Source: Auanema rhodensis (Eukaryota > Animalia > Nematoda). Taken from it: DNA of 64,000 nt. The position numbers were made by a program, and so were the translations under genes. The DNA lies in NCBI GenBank assembly GCA_964057225.1, contig OZ059894.1:5642001-5706000 (forward strand), in the 5' to 3' direction. The notes beneath the pieces were generated by a model that saw nothing but the letters and a program-made list of their open reading frames with translations, was not told where the DNA came from and searched no databases. Positions 3,071 through 50,796 of this stretch are shown one piece after another (the first letter of the stretch is position 1; every line of letters starts with the position of its first letter).

Positions 3071-6000
3071 TATACTGAAAAAAAATCTTGAAATCATTGT
3101 TATTTATGTTTTCACTATTATAAAAATATTTTCCCTTAATGCAAAGCCAACTTGCCTAAAGAGTTAAAGAATACGTGAAAAAGTGAAACTTTTTACATAC
3201 TTATATTGCAAACGTTTTGTTTGTTCTTTATGATCATTCCTATGAACTTAATAGAAGAAATTCCCTGAATTTTTACTTTCAACTTATTCGTTGCACTTTG
3301 CTTAATAGCTTTTGATAGTATTTGACATAAAAAATGATAAAAAGCAGCAACACCGTTCTGAACATCTCCAAAACTAAGCTATTAGTTTGTCTCAGGAGAA
3401 TAATTCATCAAACCTTATATATCTTATGCATATGTTCTTGGTCTGCTCTATATGTCCAGAGCTTTGCTAATAGATTCACCTTTTCTTTACTATAAAGCTT
3501 ATCAAACCACATAAATACATGATTTATACCAGTAGAGCAATAACTTAAAATGTATAATAACCTTTCAAAATAATACTTTTCTCATCCGCAATTTGCATGT
3601 TTGATAAAATTATGCTTTTATATATTTATGGATGTATATGTATATGTACATAGTTCAGATATATTTTCTCACTTATTCCTTTTTTCTTATTTTATTCACT
3701 TGCATTATAGCACAGAGTTGTCAAAAACATCTATTTGAATTGAATAAAAATATTTTGAAGTTTTTAATATGAATAACATGAGAAATGATTTCCTAACTTA
3801 CTCAGGAAATATTGGAATCATTCCAGAAAAGGTTATCTTCGTAGGCCCTACAGCATCTAACATCTTGTTGTTCAAACAGTCAAAAGAAAAGTTTGTGCTT
3901 AATTCAATAAAAACATACGGAACAAGGTGAAGAAAACTAAAATAAATCGGTGAAATGAATGCAAAAAATTGAAGACGGAGATATTTGATAGAAAAAATGA
4001 ATAACTAATCGAAATCTATATATGTAACTAAAAAGAAAAAATCCTTAAAATTAATATAATTAAGAATTATATGTACAATTCATTATTGTTCTATATATTA
4101 GATCCATAGAAAATGTTGCAGATAATTCAAATTTTAAATTGGAAATAGTAAATAGTAAAGGAAAGATAATTCCATAGATTAATACCCTCCAAGTTTTTAT
4201 ATCTTATATAAGAGTTCAGATAGATATTTTGAATTAAACAAAATTTTTAATTAGTTGTACAAGCTAATATATTTACGAACATTTTTTGTACAACGTTTTA
4301 AGTAGTTACTTAGCTACTTGAATGTATTGAGATCGTATTCCTTCATTAGTCTACTAATCACTATCGTCTTTTATACGGACACAACAAAGAAAAATATAAT
4401 AAGTCATAATAATTCTCACTAGTTAAAAACGACACTTTGGAACGGATATTAAATGAAAACTTAAGAATGAAAGATTTGAAGGTCCCATTATGGATCGCAT
4501 TATCTAGTTGTTCCATCTTGCTAAGCAGCCGGGACATGATGATTCTCCCATAATGTGAACAAGGAAGAATGCAAAAAAGCTACATATAGAGCACATGATA
4601 GCTAAAAAAGAAGCAAGAAGGAAGGAACAAGACGTGTTAAATCGAAATCTAAAGACATCCTCTAAGGATTCAGTATCTTTAGACAGCTCCTACTTCTTTT
4701 ACAAAGTAGGATGACAAAAAAATGAATGTAAAAAAAAATAGAAAAATATTCAAAAAACAAATTGTTGCATTTGCATGACGTTGTTGAAAATAGATAATAG
4801 AACAGTAATAAAAAATATAAGGAAAAGAGCATGACAGACCTGAGATAAAACATAAAAATAAAAAAAAATATATAAAACTTAGTCTGTAATATAATTTTAT
4901 AATAATAACTAGGAGAAATAACAACATATATATCTTAAAACCCTAAACTTTCAAAAATTAATTTTGATTAATAAAAAATATAGGCTGTGTGAAAAGGGCT
5001 AATGAGAATGGTTATGATTCTCCAACGAGGAGGAGCAGCACTGCTTAGACTACATAAATATTATATAACAACAGAGGATATGTGTTATTTGGTCATTAAC
5101 TTTTGTAATGAAAGAAGAGAAAAAATTTTTGAAGACACATGTATTGCAGATAGAGCTTCTATGACTAAGTGGAGGTTGGCTCGTTCTCCTGCGTCTACGA
5201 ATGAGCTTTCAAGCCTATTGAAGAAGAAACAATTTTCAATTTACTTTTCCTTGCTAAATTGGTTGGATTGAAACTATTCATATCATGTAATTGAAAGTAT
5301 TTGAATTGAAAAGAAGAAATCCAAACAACATTCCCTAGTCTGAGAAGAAATAAACGAAATGTAAGAGAATGAGAGAAAAATACGATCAAGTTGATGAAGC
5401 AAGGATACAGTAAAGCTATAACCGTAATTGAAAATTAATCTTGCTGGACGAATGTAGAAAAACCTTATTTTATCGACAAGTTGAAAAAGTTTCAGAGGAC
5501 AGACACAGGGGGGAAGAGCAGCTGAACATTGGTTTTATACTTACTTTTCTTCCAAATAAGAGACAATACATGTCTTTATACTTGTAAGAAAAATTCTTTT
5601 TTTTAATGAAAAATTGAAAGAAGATCAGGAAGTATGGACATAATGCGAGAGAAAAAATTAAAAACATCATACTTATTCGTCTCAAAAAGAAAAAAATAAT
5701 AAAAAATTCAATACCAGATACGCATCTGATTAACGACACTTGTGACGGATATGGAAGAGATAAGCAGTAGAATGAAGGGGGCATAAAACTTAAAACTCAC
5801 TAACAACTATAAGCAATTTCGAAGAAAATTGGAAAAAAGGTTTTTATTTGAAATTGCTAGTAAAGTGTCACATATTCATGAGCTACATTATCTATAGCAG
5901 TATTGTAAAATGTGTTAAGTATTTGAAAATGTTCATATTTTTTATTAGCTTATATGATGAAGATGCAACTTTGTGAAGATGCAAATTTGTGCAGGTTCAT

Positions 6001-9000
6001 GAAATAACCGAAATATTACTCAAAAATATTGTCAGATTGAACAAAAAAGGAAATTTCAAAAAAAAAATTTTAACCTTCATAAACACATTTATTAAAAATT
6101 TACAATAAAATGATTATTCTTGTTCTTTTTTTGATTGTTTTCAATTTTTGCTTGATTAATTTAAAATATTATAATTGATTAACTAAAATATTCTTATCTG
6201 CTTATGTTGGAAAATGTTGTATATCTACTCCCATCCTTCATTTCTGTTTACTTTCAAACTTTTGAGATGAATAAATACAGGAAATATAAAGCAAAACAAT
6301 TATCATGAGGTAAACTGATTGTTGTAGAATCTGAAGAGAATACGTTAGAACAGTGCATAGTGCAGAATTAATTGGAAAAAACGTCAACAAAGCTGAATAT
6401 GTCACACTTGGTTATTGAACATTTTTTTGTGTATGAAATTTCACAAAAGTTTACGAACTAACATTTGAAAATCTGCCTTTCTCATTCTTTTAGAAGATTA
6501 TTTATGCAAATTGTATTTAAATCTGATTTATGTATATAAAATATAAGGTAACATAAATATATGTTATTAGAAAATATTTTATCTACTTTCATAAAACATT
6601 TAACATGTAAGAAATTAGAGGTGAAAATTAATTATAACAAGATGAGATTAATTTCTTTGGAACTTTAGAAAGTTTTTCAGCATTTTCATCTGATGAGGTA
6701 TGAATTTAAGAATGTACCTTCATTCATGATGGAGATATAGAAAGAATTCTCATGAGACGGGAGACTACAAGTGATGTTATCATGGAATATTCACATTTTT
6801 AAAAAACCGAGGCTTCTTCAAGGAGTAAATTAAGAAAAATCGTCAAAAAAAATATCGTCAGATATGCTCGTTAGGATTCATATACCCTTGAACTTAAAGC
6901 AATAATTCAGAACGTTCTTCTTCTTTTCTGGTCATTTTTCTTTCTAGCATTTACTATCTCATTCCGTCTCGTTACTCTTCGAACTAGTTGGTTCACTCAT
7001 AAATTATGCTAAATTTCCATTTTTTTTGAAGAATGAGAGTAAAATTAAGTGGATAAATTAAATATATACTTTTCACTTACGATGTCCCACCCCTCATCTC
7101 TTGAATAACTTTATTATCCGTATCATTCTGTGTGCCATACCATGATCTGTGGATGTATCCAAAATATATTGTTGAAAAACAATTTTTTTGAAGTCAACAT
7201 ATGTTGTTCTGATGGCTCGCTACTTTGAAATGTTTTAGTCCGCAACAATCAGCAGCATCGATTTTAAAAATATATAACTGGTGGGTACAAATTGGGACAT
7301 AAAAGTTTGAAAAAAATAGTTCACTTCATTCTAAGAACATTAATTTTTTTTAAGCCTATGCACTTCATGTATCCCTTTTTTTAAAGTTTGTTTAAAATTT
7401 TGAGTTAATGGTTTAAAAAAAAAATGTTTTACTACTCCGATTTTCAATGTTAAATTTGAAAAAATATTAGATTTTTATTACTTTCAAAACATTTAGAGTA
7501 AGTAAAATCCCTGAATAAATATGATACATTTACATATTCTCTGTATACATAAATTCCTGAAAGTTTTCATAGACCTAAATCAGTTCAGAAATAACTTCAT
7601 GCTTAGAGAAAAAAGTTAATAAACATGCGTGAATATTGAATAATTAATGAAATATATGTTTTGAAAATGTACATGTTTCTAAAGATACTTGATTGAAGAA
7701 AATAATAATTTCGTCTATTTAGTACATTACTTGAGAATTGTAGAAAAGATTCATATGAAGCAATTTGTACTCATTCATTCATATTTGTTGATATGACAGC
7801 TTCTTCGAAGTTCTATTATTATAATATTATGCCCTCCCTCTCTGTAAGATCTTTATTTCACATACATATGTTTCTCTTCCATAATCTCATGTGATTCTCT
7901 AGAGATTTTAGCTCAAGTACAAAAAGGTCTCTCTGCTCATCCTGTTGAGCAATATTGTTTCAGCTGTTTCAAATGGAAGAAACAAGAACTACTAGATGAT
8001 TTTTTCATTCGAATACTATGACATAATTAAAAAAAGCCAATTGAATACACATACCTGTATTTCTATTTGACCAAATAAAACACAGAATCCAGAAGCTTAG
8101 ATTTAAAGAAAGAAGCCCAATCTGTGAAATGAAAATATAAAAAAAAGAAACTGAATTATACGAAGTAATATTAATCAAGAACGTTTCAAAACAACATTTA
8201 TGCTATCAGAGAATAATAGGAAGCAAATTAATTGACTTTTTTATCTTATGATTCTTCGGTATGAAGAAAAAAATAGAAAGGGAAAAAAGTAACCATTGAG
8301 TTAGCCGTACTATTTTCAGAAACAAAAGTAGAAATATGAGATTAATTGTTTTGCATTAATTAAAAGCAAAGCAGTACAATAAAACAAAAAAAAATAATAA
8401 TTTCAAAAATATATTTAAACTGTATGAAAAAATATTATATGAATCAAACAAGAAAGCACAATCGAACATCATAAAATATCTTTAAAAAAATACAGAAAAT
8501 GTAAATTCAACCCAAGAAGGCCAACGTCATATTAAGCGCATTGAGTGAAAATGACAGAAATTGGAAAAACGAAACTGTCATATTCATTTAAAAAGAACTA
8601 CATTCGTGCAAATGCCGTCTTTAAATCTTTGTTTCTCGATGAAGCTTCTTCATTTTCATTCGATTCGCACCCTCTTTCTATGTTTCCCTTTTTTCTCTAC
8701 TCTTTAACAAGTTATCCTTTTCGTACTGCTTCCTTTTAGATTATTTCTAAACGAAGTGACGAAATACTAAATCTTAGCGTTTAAGTACAGAAAATTCGAA
8801 AAATTCTAAAAGTAAATTTGAACACAAATTATAAACAAAGGTGTGATAGAAAAGAAGATAATGTGTGAAAAAAGCCAAAAACTCTTCTACTTGCCTCAAA
8901 ACTTCATGAAATGTATACTGCGATGCAATTTGATGCTGAAAAGTTTGGGTAAGATGGAAAAATAGGTGTAGACATTGCTTTGAATATTTAACTATTTGTA

Positions 9001-29096: not shown

Positions 29097-29098
<2 letters not shown>

Positions 29099-29180
<82 letters not shown>

Positions 29181-39665: not shown

Positions 39666-39741
<76 letters not shown>
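39662..39741. repeat. (TA)n microsatellite downstream of nlp-9
   Basis: ~80 bp alternating AT with one G interruption. Confidence 0.95.
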
Positions 39742-40019: not shown

Positions 40020-41744
40020 TTAAAATTCATTGGTTGATTGTAGATATTCCCAAAGATTTGATGACCTCTTGTTGTAATAAGGTATTTCGTAGAACCTGAA
40101 AGATAAAAAGTATTCTAACTTTTACAAATAAAAAGCTTCATTATGCAAATAAAGTGAATGACAATTTTTTCTTTATTTTGAATGTCCTTTATGTGTTACA
40201 TACTTGGCTGAATAGAGTTCATTCATTTCTCATATTTTCCTTACACTTCTTTTAAGATTTCTTTGTAAACCTATTTTGGAGCAAAAATATAAATTTTTCA
40301 TAAAATTGGATGTACTACATCATTTTTGAACTCTGTATTAAAATATTTAAACGTTCAATGCTAGAATAAAAAAAATAGTAAATATGTAACCTGCTCATGT
40401 AATCTGGTTTCCATGATCCTGCAAATGCTCGGCCTCCGCCTCGTCGTTCAACGCTGAAAAGAATTTAATTTCATTACTTTGAATTATATATGTATTTTTA
40501 TATTTTTATTTGTATTTCAACAACTTTTAATCAAAGCAATACCGTGGTCCGTATGCATAAGAATTCCAATATGGAGCAAACGATCGTCCTCCTCCTCTTT
40601 TCTCATAGAAATAGTACGGAGAAACTCCTAATGCTGAAACAATAACAGATAGGAGAAATATTTGAATAATATTTATAACATGCTATTTATTAAAAAAAAG
40701 GCTCAAAGAATCAAAAACTACCAACCACTGATTCTTTTGTTTCCTGGGGAATCGTAGAATCCATAAAATGGCCTAGCGCCTCCTCGCTTATCAACACTAC
40801 AAAGTCAGAAAAAGTTGATTAATTGGATAAAATTTTTATAAATTTCATATGAGTATGATTAGTTCATTAACTGGGCTGAAGTCTTTTTTTATTTTTAATA
40901 CAAATTCTCTATTCATATCTATATCAGATAGTTTATTTTATATTTCAGCTTCGTATCAAGATGATTCTTTATATGTTTAAGTGGAACCCTTAACCCAAAT
41001 CGAATTTTAGAAGAAAATGCTCGTAATTGGAGATGATGCAAAAGGAAAATGAAGGACATAAGTACTTATTGAAGTTGCATAGAGTTAAAAGGTTGGCAGA
41101 CAGCTTATTCATGTTATTCTATATTTGACAGTATACTATTTTCAGCTTTTTCCAAATAGTATAGACATGTATAGATTGGAAGATTTGATAAAATTATTTA
41201 AGTATATTATAGGCAAAACAAGTTGACTACTGGAACTAACTATATTTTTTATTTATCTACTTACTTGACGCTATCATCCACTGTCGTTGAATCACTGCCC
41301 ATGGCCATGCCTAAAAAAGTTAATAACTCTAAACAAATTTTGAATCAAATTCAAGCGTCAATGCCAAATTTTGTCACGTTCGCATTAGAGCCGAAAAGAG
41401 TTCTTAAACTTTCCAATAGCAAAACGAATCTTGCAAACAATTTTTCTTGTTTCACTAAGTTTTAAACTAGTTGAAAAGAATTCATTCACAAGTTTAGACA
41501 TCAACGATTTTTGTCTTTTTCAGCCGGAAGATGTAGTGACGCAATACTCTTCTTTATCTTCCGCTTCCAGCTTTCTGCGTTTTCTTGTCTTCTAGAAGAT
41601 CAGTCCTCCAGCAAGAAAAACAGTCATAGAAGATAATTCAATACCCGGTTTGTTGTTGATTTTGCAAGAAAATATAATTTGTAACTTACCAATCGCAATA
41701 GATACTGATAAAATGAACACTGTTAATTGTGTTTGTAACTTCAT
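40020..41744 (-). CDS. nlp-9: Neuropeptide-like precursor NLP-9 (GGARAF family), 6 coding exons
   Basis: Signal peptide MKLQTQLTVFILSVSIAIGMAMG. Peptides GGARPFYGFYDSPGN, GGGRSFAPYWNSYAYGPRVE and GGGRAFAGSWKPDYMSRFYEIPYYN lie between KR/RR sites. They match C. elegans NLP-9 GGARAFYGFY.. and GGGRAFAGSW... Confidence 0.95.
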
Positions 41745-44700: not shown

Positions 44701-47700
44701 CAATCAGCTGAGAAAGCGAAAAATTTCTTTTCAAGCATTAATTAACTCTCACAATAAATCTTATAAGTCTTCTATCTACGGATAAGCCAGATTTTTAACA
44801 GATAATCTAAGTTTCAGCCTTGAATTTGTTTCAGATTTAATTTTGTTCTGGCATCATTTTCACATAGGCCACACGAACGGATTTCTCTTTCTTCTTTGTT
44901 TTTAAAGGAAATAGGAAGTTCGTTTCTAGTTAAAGAAATCATCGTTATAGGGGCAGTTAGTGTAAAAATGAAATATATTATTAAAGATGATTTAATGGGG
45001 CACAAATAGAATGATGTACACACGTGAATATTAGTGACATTTAATGGGTAAAAATAAGATATAATATAGAAGGTATATGAGTTACAAGCACACCATATAT
45101 GAATGACAACTATAAAATATACCAAATTATATAGTTTGACATATTCATAAGAGAAAAGTAATAAATCAACTCAAATATAGTTTTCAACTGATTTGCTAAA
45201 TGTTCCGACATTTCTTCGGAGACCTTTTTTTCGTATGAAGCTTAGAGAGAGTCATTGTCTTTGTGCACTTCGAGCATAAAAGAAAGTGATATTAGTCAAC
45301 AAACTTGGAATACTCTTGCTATACCTTTTGAATAATTTATATTACGAGTTCGGCGTCTATTTTTTCTGTGGAAGGATGTGCTATATGTACATACTTCATG
45401 CACCTTTCCAAATGAAAAACGATATTAAGAAAAGATATGAATTCATTTTACAGAAAATCAAAAGGATACAGATTGATGAAGTATATAACTCTAAAGATAA
45501 TTTATAAAGTTTTGCTATCTAAAAAAATAGTTCTCAAATATCGTTTGTGTGAATGTTCTCACGTGAAATAACAGAAAAAATAATATTATGAAAATGTAGA
45601 AAAGTTTTTCGTCTTCTTTGCTACTACTTCTTGAAAAAAATACGGAAATACTTTTTGAAGTATCAAGCCAGAACGTTGTTAGTTGTCGATAAAGCAATCT
45701 GTATGCGAGACGATAATTGTTATTGTTCAGTTATTTAAGAATTATTACGATATTCCAAAAAACGAAAAGAAAAGAAAGATTGGAAAACGAATTAGAACTG
45801 GATAACTACTGGACACAATCTAATTTCAAATTGTAACCAAGGCACTTTGCCATAACATTCATTCATCACACACTCACATCATCATCATAAGCGTTTTGAC
45901 GGAATATCCGAAAAAACTAGCAATAGCTCTTCAACATCACTGACATAAGCTATATTAGATATTACTCATACTTTAAAAAAAAGCATTGAACGAAAAAAAA
46001 CTTGAGAATTTAGGCAGCTTAACATTAGTATCACAAGGAAAAGTTCAAGAAAATAAATGGAATAAGCTTGAAGTAGAATGATAGTTCTTTTGAAGTTGTT
46101 TTGCAATCTTGAAAATTTCAAATTCGAACAGATTCTGGAATATACGCACATGTACGTCATGAAATTACATTATATATATATATATTATATATATATGTAT
46201 ATACATATATGGTAACGATATCGAAAAAAGAAGCAACAATACGAATTTGAAAGGCCTTAACACACTATATATAGAAAATCTTTGAGAATAAAAAAGCGAA
46301 ATTTGTTGAAGTCCAGCTCGAAGCTCCTGCTCGTCAGACAGTTGATATCAGGCACTCAAATTTGATTTAGACGGCAGGAAAATTTTATACTATTTCTGAG
46401 AAAGCGCTGCTTCTTCAAGTAAACCAGACAAGTGACATCATCAATTTATTTTTATATGGTCTAATGATTACAACTATATACGTTAGAAGGCTGTGAATAA
46501 CATAAAAATGTTAACTGTTCATAGTTCCTAACAACAAAAATAGGAAGGAGGGGGGGTTAGAAAAGGAGAAACTTCATACATTATCTAAACAGTTAGTAAC
46601 GTCAAACTACAAATTTGCAAAATAGCAATTAAAAGAAGAATAATTTTAAAAAACTAGTTTGTTTAAAAAACATGCTCCGAGAAGCCAAGAATATTACAAA
46701 GATCAAAAGAGCATATTACATACAACTTTCAGATTGTTTCAGCGACGTGAAGAAGCATGTTTGTTCACGTCAGCGTAAACTTCATTAGCATATCAAGTTA
46801 GGCGTCAAAACTTCATTTTGATTTGTAAAAAGGACAGAAAATGTTGCATTCAGAGTAACAATAAAATAAATTATTATAATCTTATTAAATTATCACATTT
46901 TTTTAATATTAACATTCATTTGTTGTGAAAAAGAGTAAATATAAAATAAATAAATTACTTTACAGATATAAATATTTTACATCAATTGATATTTGGAAGG
47001 GAGTCAATTGAAAAGCATCTGGGTGTTGTTGTGGAAATCAGACACACTAGTGTGGAAAAAGAACATTAGACTTAACAGCTCAGAAAAACTCTACTTTCCT
47101 TATTAAATTTGACTACTGCTTCCAATCTTGATCTTGAAATCAAATTACGTTGTCACTTCCAACTAAACGAAGAAATCAAAATGTTCATCCTCATGGGTTT
47201 TGGTTCTGGTAAATCAACTCAACCCACATAAACCTCACTACATTTCAGTAAACAATTCTAGGATATCCAGAATAATCCAATTTCCAAACCTAAATAGTTC
47301 TCTTCAATGTTCTTTCGATCATCACTGAGATATGTTGAAGATCTCTGGTGCTTTACACTATGATAGACAGAACTATTGATTTAAGAATCTGGTTGACGTC
47401 ACTTTCCGTATGCCCAAGAGGACCACATATTATCAGTTCATGCAGTGTACCTCAGCATTTAATCTTTCTAGTCTCTCATCAATGCCTTCTCGTCTAGGAA
47501 GAGTTTCCAAATATTTCTCAACTCTCATAAGAAACATCTTGAAAACAAAATCCATACAAACATTTTATTGAAAATGATTACAACTATACTAGAATGAGAA
47601 AAATTGAGCATAACTACTGAAACAATATAGAATTAAAAAAAAGAAATATACAAAACAATACAATTCGGTATCTACATCTATACTCTGTACAATAAGTTGA

Positions 47701-47707
47701 GAATCCA

Positions 47708-47806
47708 GTCTCGGTTCCTACACGGACACTGGTCGCTCACCTGAAGAAATTTCAAATTAAACTGAATACAAAAGGTTACAGAGGGAAAACGAGTAGGAAC
47801 CGAGAC
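47708..47806. repeat. 14-bp perfect inverted repeat (17/19 extended) linking the last intron and last exon of the OPA3-like gene
   Basis: gtctcggttcctac at 47708-47721 is the exact reverse complement of gtaggaaccgagac at 47793-47806. Confidence 0.95.
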
Positions 47807-48964
47807 AGCCATTTCAAAACAAACAAAAGTTATCTACAAAACCTGTGAGTTTATGAATTTAAAACAGTCTAGAGCATATATGGCAAACAGAGTATCATTC
47901 CTAAGAGGTGGATAACAAGTGAGGGAATATGGCACATCCATTTGAAATCACAGCGAGGAAGCTTGTGCAAGAGTTAGAAAATTTTACATTAGTCATCATA
48001 TTAGCCACTCCACCGACCAAACACAGACAAGACAAAACTTTCAGCTAAACCAATAACCCCCGGTCTGGGAAGTTCATACAAAAATTCTTTTTTTCGGAAG
48101 CGCAATGTTTTTCCACGCTCATGAAATGCTCCAGCCTCTTCAATACCGATTGATGACCCACTTCGAACAACCAAAAATTCCTCATTACCTAAGAGAAATT
48201 CATATTCGCTATCAATATAAGAAGCCCTCCAAAAGCAAAGCAGAAAAACACAAGGGAAAAAATTCGAAGATGGAAAAAATTCAACTAACCCTCTAGAACC
48301 ACTTTAGCAGCATCGTCAATAGGAAGCGAAGATACTCTGGCGAAGTTTGCACGTTTACTGCTGGTACCCGCATCAGGTTCATCAGGTTTAGACATATTCT
48401 AAACATAATTCATGGAATACATATGCGAACTAATATTACAGTAGCAAGTACATTGTCATTCAAATGACTTTCTAATATTTTCACCCGTTCTTGCAATTCA
48501 GCAATAGCATCTCCATACTCCTGCTTGATCTTATGAAATTCTTCTGCTTTGATAGATTCGGGAGCATTCCAATTTGTATAGAAATAATACCCGCAAAAAA
48601 CTCCTAGAGAATATGTAAATAGCACAGTTTGTTGCACAAAATCAGACGCCTGAAATCTCGAAATATAGCGCGCAGACACCATAAAATAAAACCTGCTCCA
48701 ATGCAGCAGCTTCCGACACTTGTACGGGCACAGTTGGAGCTCCTAATCCCAAGTTTTTCATTCGCAACCTCGTTGTAAAACGAGCTATCCCTCTACCGAC
48801 AGGAATAAGAATTTTATTCCGAAAAGTTGGATGATTTTTTCCATATTGCAATACTGCGTCAGCTACAGGCTTCGATATCTGGATACCGATATTAAATAGG
48901 TGGAAAATAGAATAATTACCTGACGAGCAGCAATGAGGAAGACTTGAATCATGGGGAAACCCAT
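47718..48964 (-). CDS. OPA3-like mitochondrial protein with alternative terminal exons (stop at 47718 or 48001)
   Basis: MGFPMIQVFLIAARQ|ISKPVADAVLQYGKNHPTFRNKILIPVG..VSEAAALEQ|ASDFVQQTVLFTYS..coiled coil AIAELQERVKILE fits the OPA3 family pattern (RQISKP.A..K.HP.FR). Further exon NMSKPDEP..KVVLE. Confidence 0.88.
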
Positions 48965-49222
48965 GATTAAGCGCTCGATTAGTCTTACGAGGCGCCAAAA
49001 AATATATTATTTAAGAAACGTATGCAAAACAATTCAACTAAGGAGGTATGAAACGGTTAAATAACCTCAAAATGGATAGATACATATAGATATATATCAA
49101 TATGTTTTATACTGTGGAAGCAAAAAGTAACAACAGTTGTGAAACCAAGTACAAAATCGAATCAACAACGAAGCAATAACAATAAACAAAACAAACTCAA
49201 CAGATTTCAACAACTGATTTAC

Positions 49223-50796
49223 CTATACGACATTCAACGCATTATAAATTTGTTCCTTGAGGGAACGGCATTTACTTTCCATTACCTTAACAATTTCTCA
49301 GTTAACGTTCTAATTCGAATATAATCTTTACCTTGCAAGCTTCACTTACGAGTTCATGGGACTTTAATGCTCCTGTAGATTCCACACTAACTAAAAAAAA
49401 AGGATTATTGTATAATACTTAAGTCATTTGTTACAAATAAAGTGATGCTTCTTCTTCCCTAAAACAACAAAAGGTGCAAGATCTTCATGTCGGAAAATAT
49501 TACGACTGCAGGTGTCAATACGAGCATCAACAACGGATGCAATAGATTTGCCTGTTAAATAAAACCAAACTTATGAAAGTTTAAAATAAATAAAAACCAT
49601 TTTTCTGAATAAGCTGGACAACACCTTCAGCAAAAGAACTCTTAACTCTTTCGGCATCCTCATTCTCAAAATCTTTTAAGAATTTTATGGTAGGTAGCAG
49701 CCTTTAATAAACAATACGAATTCTATCAATAATTGAATTACCAATAATACCTGTAACTGGCGGTAGCAACTGGGCTAAATTTTGCATGATCTCTACCAAT
49801 CCCCTTAACAGCGTGACAACTGGCTTCAATCTCTTGACCAGGACGTAATTTAGCTACTAGAATGTTATCATTCACCATTCGGGGTGGCTTATCCACATAT
49901 TCGCTAGCCTGATGCAACAATTAGAGATATACTACATAAATAATAATATAATAAAATTACCTGCTCGCCACATGGTTTCCATTCAAACGAATTAGAGTAG
50001 ACAGAACTGCTGTGATAAAGCTGAATAGGTTCAGTAGCGGTAGATGGAGCATTTTTGTTTCTTTTACAAAGAACGTGAATTTTGAAAACCAAATTTCTAG
50101 ATGAATCAGGTGTAGGTTCTTCATCACAATCCACTCCATTTTCATTTATTCCAACAACCTACAATATACCTAAAGGGTAAGTCAAACAAAAGTAATTCAG
50201 ACCTTTTCTAGAGGAAATTCAAAATTTCTGGGATCAGCAAAAAGAGGTAAGAGACCAATACGGTGGCACAAAACTTCGTCCTAAGAGTAAATCTATTTGA
50301 ATATTTGAATAAGATTTTTACCTGAATAACAGAGGTATTTTGATACAAATATATTTTTTCAATAGCCATGGTTGGAACCTGAAGTGTATAACAGTACATT
50401 AATTTCTGTAGCCAAACTAACCTCAGCAATAAGAATACGTCTCAAAGCATTAGCTATGGGGGCCTCAACATTTATTAAATCAAACTCGAGGATCATTCCA
50501 TCCTCGTTTTCATTTATTATATCGATCTGAATACAAACTTGTATATAAAAAAAAACTTAGTGCTTACCGTAATTTTTTCCAAGTATTCTGGTAAGTTTAA
50601 CTTGACCGTTTGAGAAGAATAATCTGAAGCAGCATCGTACGTCTAAATGTAATATAACACTAATATATCAGTATTCCTAGATAAGATATACATTAAGAAC
50701 TCTCTCATCTTCCATCCGTATTTCATCATCAGCAACGTGGGATGTATCTACTTCTTTTTTAACATTTTGAGCATTAGTACTTCTACTTCGGGCCAT
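49223..50796 (-). CDS. rpac-40: RNA polymerase I/III subunit RPAC1/AC40 (POLR1C), ~11 exons
   Basis: [22 protein letters not shown]|[19 protein letters not shown]|[50 protein letters not shown]|[12 protein letters not shown]. Confidence 0.97.

What the first reader, a model, noticed from the sequence alone, without database searches (positions are those of the whole stretch)
47589..47808. Intron-exon duplex buries the OPA3 UAG stop and brackets the last 3' splice site: candidate amber/W editing site or splicing switch
Seen: on the minus-strand pre-mRNA, intronic GUCUCGGUUCCUAC (47806-47793) pairs perfectly with exonic GUAGGAACCGAGAC (47721-47708). The stem extends to 17/19 bp with two U-U mismatches. 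The exonic arm contains the stop UAG (47720-47718), and the pyrimidine tract and acceptor AG (47742-47741) lie in the ~65-nt loop. A GC-balanced 14-mer match 70 nt apart in such AT-rich DNA is unlikely to be chance. After the UAG the frame stays open for 42 codons (EPRLDSQLIVQSIDVDTELYCFVYFFFLILYCFSSYAQFFSF*, stop ending 47589), including a hydrophobic run. Known: ADARs prefer UAG triplets in duplexes formed with intronic complementary sequence, and UAG>UIG reads as Trp (HDV amber/W). Inference: either A-to-I recoding adds a possible tail anchor, or the stem controls use of this acceptor. The hydrophobicity may simply reflect a U-rich UTR.
Basis: partly seen in the sequence, partly recalled or inferred. 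Interest (0 to 1): 0.8.

Follow-up and report, generated by a model that had tools for sequence, protein, structure and literature searches.

The report
Conserved hairpin around OPA3 splice acceptor
A short RNA hairpin that encloses one of two competing splice acceptors at the end of a nematode OPA3 gene is real and is conserved in at least four distant parasitic nematodes, so it most likely helps set the ratio of the two protein isoforms and does not recode the stop codon.

Summary
A perfect 14-bp stem (17/19 extended) joins 47793-47806 to 47708-47721 on the minus strand. Spliced RNA contigs confirm the acceptor AG at 47741-47742 and the UAG at 47718-47720.

The acceptor is the distal one of two alternative 3' splice sites that share one donor. 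The proximal acceptor (48189-48190) gives a 245-aa OPA3 with a conserved long tail. The distal acceptor gives a 190-aa form. In the long-form mRNA the whole hairpin lies in the 3'UTR.

Nematode OPA3 proteins in general fall into these two tail classes; C. elegans H43I07.1 has both.

Haemonchus, Teladorsagia, Ancylostoma and Parelaphostrongylus each carry the same arm pair, CUCGGUUCC/GGAACCGAG, once per gene, around the same acceptor. The 3' core starts at exon position 23 in all of them. Three flanking base pairs show compensatory changes.

Recoding is not supported:
- RNA contigs read A at 47719.
- That A is unpaired in 3 of 5 species.
- The post-UAG frame is not conserved.

Best reading: a conserved splice-site-masking hairpin that tunes isoform choice, a new member of a known kind. 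The direction of its effect is untested.

The parts
47793..47806 (-). 5' arm of the hairpin (GUCUCGGUUCCUAC). It is intronic for the short isoform and 3'UTR for the long isoform. The invariant core CUCGGUUCC is 47796-47804. The imperfect extension reaches 47790-47808.
   Evidence: The core is identical in four other nematodes.
47708..47721 (-). 3' arm of the hairpin (GUAGGAACCGAGAC), in the terminal exon. The invariant core GGAACCGAG is 47710-47718 and starts at exon position 23. The extension reaches 47706-47724.
47718..47720 (-). UAG stop codon of the short (190-aa) OPA3 isoform. Its G is the first base of the invariant 3' core. Its A (47719) pairs with U47794.
   Evidence: Spliced model from RNA contigs. 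No other letter in the RNA contigs.
47741..47742 (-). Distal alternative 3' splice site (uucuucAG|GUGAGC), inside the 71-nt hairpin loop. It defines the 549-nt intron 47741-48289.
   Evidence: Joint 47738/47740 to 48288/48290 in RNA runs X10-X12 and absent from DNA run X9.
47551..47740 (-). Terminal exon of the short isoform: 20 coding nt, the UAG, then about 167 nt of 3'UTR. The AATAAA hexamer is at 47564-47569. RNA contigs end at 47551.
48189..48190 (-). Proximal alternative 3' splice site (ucucuuAG|GUAAUG). It defines the 101-nt intron 48189-48289.
   Evidence: Joint 48186/48188 to 48288/48290 in X10-X12.
48001..48188 (-). Long-tail coding part of the long (245-aa) isoform (G-NEEFLVVRSGSSIGIEE...GRWSG, stop UAA 48001-48003). 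The transcript then runs unspliced through both hairpin arms to the same poly(A) site.
   Evidence: The RNA contig 47712-48186 is continuous. The tail is homologous to the long tails of Haemonchus, Cylicocyclus and Caenorhabditis OPA3.
48290..48398 (-). OPA3 exon 4, ending in the single donor (GAGG|GUUAGU, GU at 48288-48289) that both acceptors share.
48440..48964 (-). OPA3 exons 1-3 (48920-48964, 48693-48878, 48440-48649), separated by 41- and 43-nt introns.
   Evidence: Joints, splice sites and frame, Pfam OPA3.

Best explanation
The window comes from a rhabditid nematode. Its OPA3 gene ends in one donor (after 48290) and two competing acceptors. The proximal acceptor (48189-48190) yields a 245-aa protein with a conserved 61-residue tail. 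The distal acceptor (47741-47742) yields a 190-aa protein with a 7-residue tail.

A 14-17-bp hairpin closes around the distal acceptor. Its 5' arm lies 52 nt upstream of the AG, and its 3' arm starts 20 nt into the exon. The branch region, the pyrimidine tract and the AG therefore sit in a closed 71-nt loop.

I read this hairpin as a conserved cis-acting RNA structure that modulates use of the distal acceptor, and so sets the long/short OPA3 isoform ratio. The most likely mode is masking or looping-out. The strong distal site (UUCUUCAG|G) is damped, so the donor can pair with the weaker proximal site. The leftover acceptor then stays inert in the long isoform's 3'UTR.

**Shown:** the two isoforms, the stem, its conservation and covariation, and its fixed register to the acceptor.

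**Inferred:** that it acts on splicing, and that its effect is repressive.

The overlap with the UAG follows from the fixed register of the 3' arm. It is not the purpose of the structure.
For: **The enclosed site is alternatively used.**
- Both junctions (48290^47740 and 48290^48188) were assembled in all three RNA runs, and neither in the DNA run.

**The alternative is ancient.**
- Nematode OPA3 proteins fall into a short-tail class (4-13 aa) and a long-tail class (EEYLVVRRGSS.GIE...).
- C. elegans H43I07.1 has 275-, 221- and 214-aa products.
- The long-tail exon lies proximal and the short-tail exon distal in C. elegans, C. briggsae, C. remanei, C. angaria and H. contortus.

**The stem is conserved.**
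- H. contortus, T. circumcincta, A. caninum and P. tenuis each carry exactly one CTCGGTTCC...GGAACCGAG pair per gene. It brackets the short-tail acceptor, with loops of 69-88 nt.
- The loop and flanks are otherwise unalignable to the window.

**There is covariation.**
- The consensus is a 14-pair helix that is 95.7% paired.
- Nine pairs are invariant and three change on both sides: AU x4/CG x1; GC x3/AU/GU; CG x3/UA/UG.
- 0 of 500 column shuffles reach the observed covariation score. Sliding the partners drops pairing from 92% to 32-47%.

**The register is tied to the splice site.**
- The 3' core starts at exon position 23 in all five species.
- A P. pacificus candidate acceptor is bracketed by a 15-bp helix whose 3' arm also starts at position 23. 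Its arms look like the core with one U-A pair deleted from both sides. Its predicted stop codon lies outside the helix.

**Context from P. pacificus and the literature.**
- In P. pacificus the long tail is made by not splicing at all. This requires the distal acceptor to be held back in some transcripts.
- Looping-out and masking of splice sites by RNA duplexes is an established mechanism (review PMC7404189; PMC11162794).
Against: - No experiment or in-vivo structure probing was available, so the direction of the effect (repress or promote) is inferred.
- The nine core pairs are invariant in sequence. That pattern is as typical of a protein-recognised element as of a pure structural clamp, and invariant pairs say nothing about pairing.
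- The covariation rests on only five sequences, four of them from one order (Strongylida). The single CG at pair 21-134 and the UA at pair 24-131 come from the window sequence alone.
- The acceptor in a 71-nt loop is single-stranded and need not be inaccessible.
- Caenorhabditis has no GGAACCGAG core. C. briggsae, C. remanei and C. angaria fold into other intron-exon hairpins, but C. elegans does not (z +0.4). The structure is therefore not required for the two-isoform design.
- The covariance model did not recover the P. pacificus candidate, and that helix alone is not significant (5 of 60 shuffles).
- Short-tail acceptors in the four other species rest on gene predictions and homology, not on RNA I could inspect.
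Confidence: 0.6

Rival explanations
1. The hairpin is a post-splicing cis-element of the long-isoform mRNA. Only that mRNA keeps both arms, in its 3'UTR. A sequence-specific double-stranded-RNA-binding factor would read it to control stability, translation or localisation of the mRNA for this mitochondrial protein. Its position around the acceptor would be incidental.
For: - The intact hairpin survives only in the long isoform.
- Nine base pairs are invariant in sequence across five species, which suggests sequence-specific recognition.
Against: - The 3' arm keeps an exact register to the splice site (exon position 23) in five species, and in the P. pacificus candidate, while the distance from the 5' arm to the AG varies.
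- A pure 3'UTR element has no reason to straddle an acceptor.
- Caenorhabditis long isoforms lack the core.
Confidence: 0.2
2. The intronic arm serves as an editing-site complementary sequence, A47719 of the UAG is deaminated in the pre-mRNA, UIG is read as Trp, and a 42-residue hydrophobic extension is added. A weaker variant is that ADAR binds or edits the duplex without recoding and thereby influences splicing.
For: - UAG is the preferred ADAR triplet (established knowledge).
- The UAG is kept in all five species, with its G in the helix.
- ADAR binding to exon/Py-tract duplexes can mask 3' splice sites independently of editing (PMC7404189).
Against: - RNA contigs of three runs show no other letter anywhere from 47551 to 48186.
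- The target A is one pair from the helix end here and is mismatched (A-G, A-A) in three of five species.
- The helix is only 14-15 bp.
- Read-on frames are 10-42 codons long and unrelated beyond EPR.
- There is no W-EPR protein among 50 homologues.
- Caenorhabditis uses UGA or UAA at this stop, and the P. pacificus candidate has its stop outside the helix.
- Coding-region editing is about 1% of sites in C. elegans (PMC5644944).
Confidence: 0.06
3. The inverted repeat is a chance or neutral feature of this genome, for example a template-switch product or transposon termini, and has no function.
For: - About one 64-kb window in six contains some perfect 14-mer inverted repeat by chance.
- Earlier notes report larger inverted duplications nearby in this genome.
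Against: - Both arms are identical over 9 nt at the orthologous position in four other nematode genera, inside otherwise unalignable sequence, and the flanks show compensatory changes.
- There is a single copy in the window and one pair per orthologous gene.
Confidence: 0.02

Closest known systems
Looping-out or masking of splice sites by local pre-mRNA duplexes. Examples are summarised in PMC7404189 section 4.2-4.3. From my own knowledge: the chicken beta-tropomyosin exon 6B stem and yeast 3'ss-selecting hairpins.
   Same: - An intron-exon duplex encloses the branch region, Py-tract and AG of an alternatively used acceptor.
- The arms are conserved with compensatory changes.
- The predicted effect is a shift between competing sites.
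   Different: - Here the choice is between two terminal-exon acceptors that share one donor and one poly(A) site.
- The masked acceptor therefore stays in the 3'UTR of the other isoform.
- No functional test exists.
Conserved stem-loops with concealed branch sites, such as the SF3B3 poison-exon switch (PMC11162794).
   Same: - A deeply conserved short stem next to a regulated 3' splice site.
- Destabilising that stem increases use of the site.
   Different: - In SF3B3 the branch site lies inside the stem and both arms are intronic.
- Here the stem ends 52 nt upstream of the AG, one arm is exonic, and the branch region lies in the loop.
ADAR exon/ECS duplexes: the HDV amber/W site, and the GluA2 Q/R and R/G sites.
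   Same: - An exonic target triplet UAG is base-paired to intronic sequence.
- The duplex is destroyed by splicing.
   Different: - The helix is short, and the A lies at the helix edge or is unpaired in most species.
- The complementary arm is upstream, not downstream.
- No A>G is seen in RNA contigs, and no recoded product is conserved.
Human OPA3 isoforms OPA3A and OPA3B, made from alternative terminal exons (my own knowledge, not tested here).
   Same: The same gene family also makes two C-terminal variants by alternative last exons.
   Different: - The human exons are paralogous alternatives.
- The nematode tails are unrelated in length and sequence.
- No hairpin is known there.

Membership tests
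RNA-structure-regulated alternative splicing (splice-site masking or looping-out) | The enclosed site is an alternatively used splice site. | tested here: met
   Two acceptors (48189-90 and 47741-42) are joined to one donor in three RNA runs. Both tail classes occur across nematodes.
RNA-structure-regulated alternative splicing (splice-site masking or looping-out) | The pairing arms are conserved across species, with compensatory substitutions. | tested here: met
   The five-species helix has 14 pairs. Nine are invariant and three change on both sides. 0/500 shuffles reach the covariation score. The sample is small.
RNA-structure-regulated alternative splicing (splice-site masking or looping-out) | Breaking the stem changes the isoform ratio, and compensatory mutations restore it. 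| not testable with these tools
   This needs a minigene or genome editing.
RNA-structure-regulated alternative splicing (splice-site masking or looping-out) | The duplex forms in vivo on nascent RNA. | not testable with these tools
   Only thermodynamic prediction is available (MFE -36.1 kcal/mol, z -3.25).
Site-selective ADAR recoding substrate (amber/W type) | A-to-G difference between RNA and DNA at the target adenosine. | tested here: not met
   There are no other letters in the RNA contigs that cover 47719 in X10-X12. Contigs drop rare variants, so only majority editing is excluded.
Site-selective ADAR recoding substrate (amber/W type) | The target A is embedded in a duplex with helix on both sides. 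| tested here: not met
   The A is the second pair from the loop end here. It is the terminal pair in H. contortus and is mismatched in T. circumcincta, A. caninum and P. tenuis.
Site-selective ADAR recoding substrate (amber/W type) | The recoded product is under selection (a conserved extension). | tested here: not met
   Post-UAG frames are 10, 17, 22, 24 and 42 codons long. Only EPR is shared.
Site-selective ADAR recoding substrate (amber/W type) | The change depends on an ADAR enzyme. | not testable with these tools
   No mutant data are available, and the ADAR genes of this species were not examined.
Recursive splice site (juxtaposed 3'ss/5'ss) | The regenerated 5' splice site is used for a further splicing step. 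| tested here: not met
   The site reads cag|GUGAGC, but RNA contigs run on from 47740 to the poly(A) site at 47551 with no further joint. The GU is absent in A. caninum and P. tenuis.
Transposon terminal inverted repeats (MITE) | Multiple dispersed copies of the arms. | tested here: not met
   There is one pair in the 64-kb window and one per orthologous gene.

The most novel reading that the evidence does not exclude
The hairpin could be a nematode-specific safeguard. In nematodes, an acceptor with no upstream donor behaves as an outron and is spliced to a spliced leader (established knowledge for C. elegans).

Once the donor has been used with the proximal acceptor, or not used at all as in P. 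pacificus, the strong distal acceptor is left orphaned in the long isoform's 3'UTR. SL trans-splicing there would cut the mRNA off from its poly(A) tail.

On this reading the hairpin shields that orphan acceptor from the trans-spliceosome. The short isoform arises only when cis-splicing acts before the hairpin folds.

No spliced-leader-like loose end was seen at 47740 in the RNA contigs. That fits this reading but does not prove it.
Probability: 0.15. Interest if true: 0.72.

Novelty: new member of a known kind. Interest (0 to 1): 0.55.

Why it matters
OPA3 is a mitochondrial membrane protein whose loss causes optic atrophy in humans. What its C-terminal isoforms do is poorly understood.

This finding adds three things:
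- Rhabditid nematodes keep a long-tail and a short-tail OPA3, made from one donor and two acceptors.
- One acceptor is wrapped in a hairpin whose arms have stayed identical over 9 bp between free-living and parasitic lineages.
- That gives a compact, genetically testable example of structure-controlled 3' splice-site choice in nematodes, where few are documented. No paper in the searched library mentions the C. elegans orthologue H43I07.1.

It also offers a way to ask how nematodes keep unused acceptors in 3'UTRs from being trans-spliced.

Finally, it removes an attractive but unsupported claim of stop-codon recoding by ADAR.

Tried and rejected
- **Metagenome scan** for CTCGGTTCC-N(62-92)-GGAACCGAG. 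It gave 120+ hits. The pattern is palindromic and short. None has OPA3 coding sequence nearby, and none of the six low-GC loci inspected has an ag|G...UAG context. These are chance matches.
- **Auanema sp. JU1783**, the closest available relative (89% protein identity over exon 2). Its locus L001 is replaced by runs of N after exon 3 (4480-5669 and 6086-8279), so the hairpin region cannot be read. What looked like an inverted copy of exon 3 there is a 63-nt piece next to the masked stretch.
- **No protein of the window's own species or of a congener** was found in two word searches. Within-genus covariation could not be tested.
- **P0023 (C. elegans short form) and P0018 (N. brasiliensis)** are not on record as gene products. 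The C. elegans locus was reached through its longest isoform instead.
- **Covariance model R1** finds only its five training loci at high score. It finds nothing in Caenorhabditis or Pristionchus. A weak hit at window 40550-40671 (18 bits) has no such hairpin.
- **An analogous hairpin in Caenorhabditis.** C. briggsae, C. remanei and C. angaria fold intron against exon around the distal acceptor (z -2.1 to -3.5), but C. elegans does not (z +0.4). My cross-pair count did not separate real from shuffled sequences. This is left as unproven.
- **A second copy of either arm**, which could act as a competing selector site. None was found within one mismatch in any of the five genes, apart from one unrelated CTCGGTTAC early in T. 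circumcincta.
- **Pfam on the long tail.** No family was found.
- **Earlier notes of this scan.** Nothing bears on this site.
Full report
**1. The observation**

On the minus strand, GUCUCGGUUCCUAC (47806-47793) is the exact reverse complement of GUAGGAACCGAGAC (47721-47708). One U-U mismatch on each side is followed by further C-G and G-C pairs. RNAfold places this helix in both the minimum-energy and the centroid structures of 47690-47825 (-36.1 kcal/mol, z -3.25).

It is the only 14-mer inverted repeat that is not low-complexity, with a loop of 3-100 nt, in the 64-kb window. About 0.15-0.18 of any composition are expected per window from base composition and from Markov-1 simulations. A pair as G+C-rich as this one is far rarer: about 7e-5 per window by my own calculation from the frequencies. 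Because the scan reads very many windows, I did not treat the statistics as decisive.

**2. The gene and the RNA evidence**

The gene is OPA3 (Pfam PF07047). Sixteen public runs hold this DNA. Four small runs from one study hold only two thirds of the sampled words.

Three of those four runs, laid on 45500-50500 together with one DNA run, proved to be RNA. Their contigs skip 41-52-nt GT..AG introns that the DNA run does not skip.

They give OPA3 exons at 48964-48920, 48878-48693, 48649-48440 and 48398-48290. From the single donor after 48290 there are two junctions:
- One goes to 48188 (acceptor AG 48190-48189; 101-nt intron).
- One goes to 47740 (acceptor AG 47742-47741; 549-nt intron).

Both junctions were assembled in all three RNA runs.

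The contig that starts at 48186 runs unspliced to 47712 and overlaps the shared 3' piece 47741-47551. That piece ends 13 nt after an AATAAA at 47569-47564.

Translation gives two proteins:
- A 245-aa protein whose last 61 residues (NEEFLVVRSGSSIGIEE...) end at UAA 48003-48001.

In the long-isoform mRNA both arms of the stem sit in the 3'UTR.

No other letter appears in any RNA contig over 47551-48186, including position 47719. Contigs drop minority variants, so only majority editing is excluded.

All three RNA runs come from one study. Read laying was given 5,001 letters.

**3. What organism, and is the alternative conserved?**

The best protein match to exon 2 is Auanema sp. JU1783 (89%), followed by strongylids and other Rhabditida. 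Introns of 41-52 nt and 30% G+C fit a rhabditid nematode.

A second search reached longer proteins, using a strongylid OPA3 as query. It showed that nematode OPA3 proteins diverge directly after the conserved ...SSLP.D.A..(V/I)(V/L)L.G motif into two classes:
- Short tails of 4-13 residues (ESRKSL, EARKSM, KTYKPT, RRRTTNPQAEPR, ...).
- Long tails of about 55-65 residues (EEYLVVRRGSSVGIE...), homologous to the window's long tail (E down to 3e-13).

C. elegans H43I07.1 is annotated with all three products: 275, 221 and 214 aa.

The long-tail exon lies proximal, and the short-tail exon 200-620 nt beyond its stop, in H. contortus, C. briggsae, C. remanei, C. angaria and C. elegans. The same order holds in the window.

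**4. The stem in other species**

In H. contortus the short-tail exon reads uuauuuag|GU GAA UCU CGC AAG UCU CUG UAG GAACCGAGGUAUG. The sequence CAUACCUCGGUUCCU lies 54 nt upstream of the acceptor AG.

T. circumcincta, A. caninum and P. tenuis show the same arrangement. Each gene has exactly one CTCGGTTCC and one GGAACCGAG, 69-88 nt apart. The pair brackets the annotated short-tail acceptor.

In all five species the UAG occupies exon positions 21-23, and the 3' core begins at position 23, on the G of the UAG.

Outside the two cores and the acceptor, the window sequence is essentially unalignable to the strongylids.

RNAalifold returns a 14-pair helix. Counted on the model-fitted alignment:
- It is 95.7% paired.
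- Nine pairs never vary.
- Three outer pairs change on both sides: AU x4/CG x1; GC x3/AU x1/GU x1; CG x3/UA x1/UG x1.
- No column shuffle out of 500 reaches the observed covariation score.
- Sliding the partners by 1-3 columns drops pairing from 92% to 32-47%.

There are caveats. The sample is five sequences, four from one order. The alignment was fitted to the structure. The shuffle control ignores phylogeny.

An inner helix that would pair the AG itself is also predicted. It sits in poorly alignable loop sequence, so I do not rely on it.

**5. Beyond that clade**

P. pacificus has no proximal acceptor. The long tail is read straight through the donor (GAAG|GUGAGC). About 300 nt past its stop there is an acceptor-like uuauag|GUAAGU that would give a G-KSE-UGA tail.

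That site is bracketed by a 15-bp helix, UCGGUCCUUCCUUUU/GGAAGGAAGGAUCGA, whose 3' arm again starts at exon position 23. The helix arms resemble the core with one U-A pair removed from both sides (CUCGGU-CC; GGA-UCGA).

This is suggestive of homology, but it is unverified:
- The helix alone is not significant (5 of 60 shuffles).
- The covariance model did not find it.
- I have no RNA for it.

Caenorhabditis lacks the core. Three species fold other intron-exon hairpins around the distal acceptor, but C. elegans does not. The hairpin is therefore not indispensable to the two-isoform design.

**6. Mechanism**

What is shown:
- There are two competing acceptors.
- A conserved, covarying hairpin encloses one of them.
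- Its 3' arm is locked in register to that acceptor.

The simplest reading is that the hairpin modulates use of the distal acceptor. I favour repression (masking or looping-out) for three reasons:
- The distal site is the stronger match to the nematode UUUUCAG|R consensus.
- In P. pacificus the long isoform can only arise if the distal site is left unused.
- In the long isoform the unused acceptor has to remain inert in the 3'UTR.

The direction is inference. Looping-out and steric masking of splice sites by local duplexes are well documented (PMC7404189; PMC11162794).

The main rival is that the intact hairpin, which survives only in the long mRNA, is a post-splicing 3'UTR element read by a protein. 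The sequence invariance of the core speaks for that reading. The fixed register to the acceptor speaks against it.

**7. The editing idea**

Several points speak against amber/W recoding:
- No A>G is seen in the RNA contigs.
- The helix is only 14-15 bp. The target A is one pair from its end here, and it is mismatched in three of five species.
- Read-on frames are 10-42 codons long and share only the stem-encoded EPR.
- No homologue reads through.
- Other lineages use UGA or UAA at this stop, or place the stop outside the helix.
- Coding-region sites are about 1% of C. elegans editing (PMC5644944).

The UAG is conserved because its G is the first core pair and a stop is needed at that position. 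Low-level editing, or editing-independent ADAR binding, cannot be excluded with these data.

**8. Novelty and verdict**

No paper in the searched library mentions H43I07.1. Searches for OPA3 with nematode splicing structure found nothing specific.

This is a new, well-conserved member of a known kind of regulator, not a new kind.

An untested and more novel possibility is that the hairpin protects an orphan acceptor in the 3'UTR from spliced-leader trans-splicing.

Noticed in passing
window 48995-49093 (minus strand) and upstream to about 50500; loci L001, L002, L003, L124, L126, L128, L129, L130: The RNA-polymerase I/III subunit gene (RPAC40-like; RNA_pol_L and RNA_pol_A_bac domains) ends about 100 nt upstream of OPA3 on the same strand. 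The order glycosyltransferase - RPAC - OPA3 is kept from Auanema to Caenorhabditis and strongylids. This looks like a conserved operon.
   Followed up: partly
window 47736-47742 (minus strand); L003:5335-5342; L124 about 6079-6086; L127:4682-4689: The distal acceptor is directly followed by a 5'-splice-site-like GUGAG or GUAAG (cag|GUGAGC, uag|GUGAGU, uag|GUAAGU). This is the look of a recursive splice site. However, RNA contigs keep the exon through to the poly(A) site, and A. caninum and P. tenuis lack the GU.
   Followed up: partly
L127:4582-4720 (Pristionchus pacificus): The long OPA3 tail is made by reading through the donor without splicing. A predicted distal acceptor at 4682-4683 is bracketed by a 15-bp helix. 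Its arms look like the conserved core with one base pair deleted on both sides, and its 3' arm starts at exon position 23 as in the other species.
   Followed up: partly
L130:4457-4498 (C. elegans H43I07.1): A third annotated isoform (214 aa, tail GTYDDD) arises from read-through of the same donor. The same TYDDD tail occurs in C. japonica and in a transcript-derived protein. Retention of this intron therefore seems conserved within Caenorhabditis.
   Followed up: no
L001:4417-4479 and 6023-6085 (Auanema sp. JU1783): A 63-nt piece of OPA3 exon 3 appears twice in inverted orientation, each copy next to a long run of N. This may be an assembly or masking artefact, or a real inverted duplication. 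It made this closest relative unusable.
   Followed up: partly
window 29098-29170 and 39679-39730: Long (TA)n microsatellites dominate naive inverted-repeat counts in this window.
   Followed up: no
window 47433-47555 (minus strand): A 40-codon ORF (MDFVFKMFLMRVEKYLETLPRREGIDERLERLNAEV...) starts directly after the OPA3 poly(A) site. No RNA contig covers it in the three runs laid. It may be the first exon of a downstream gene.
   Followed up: no
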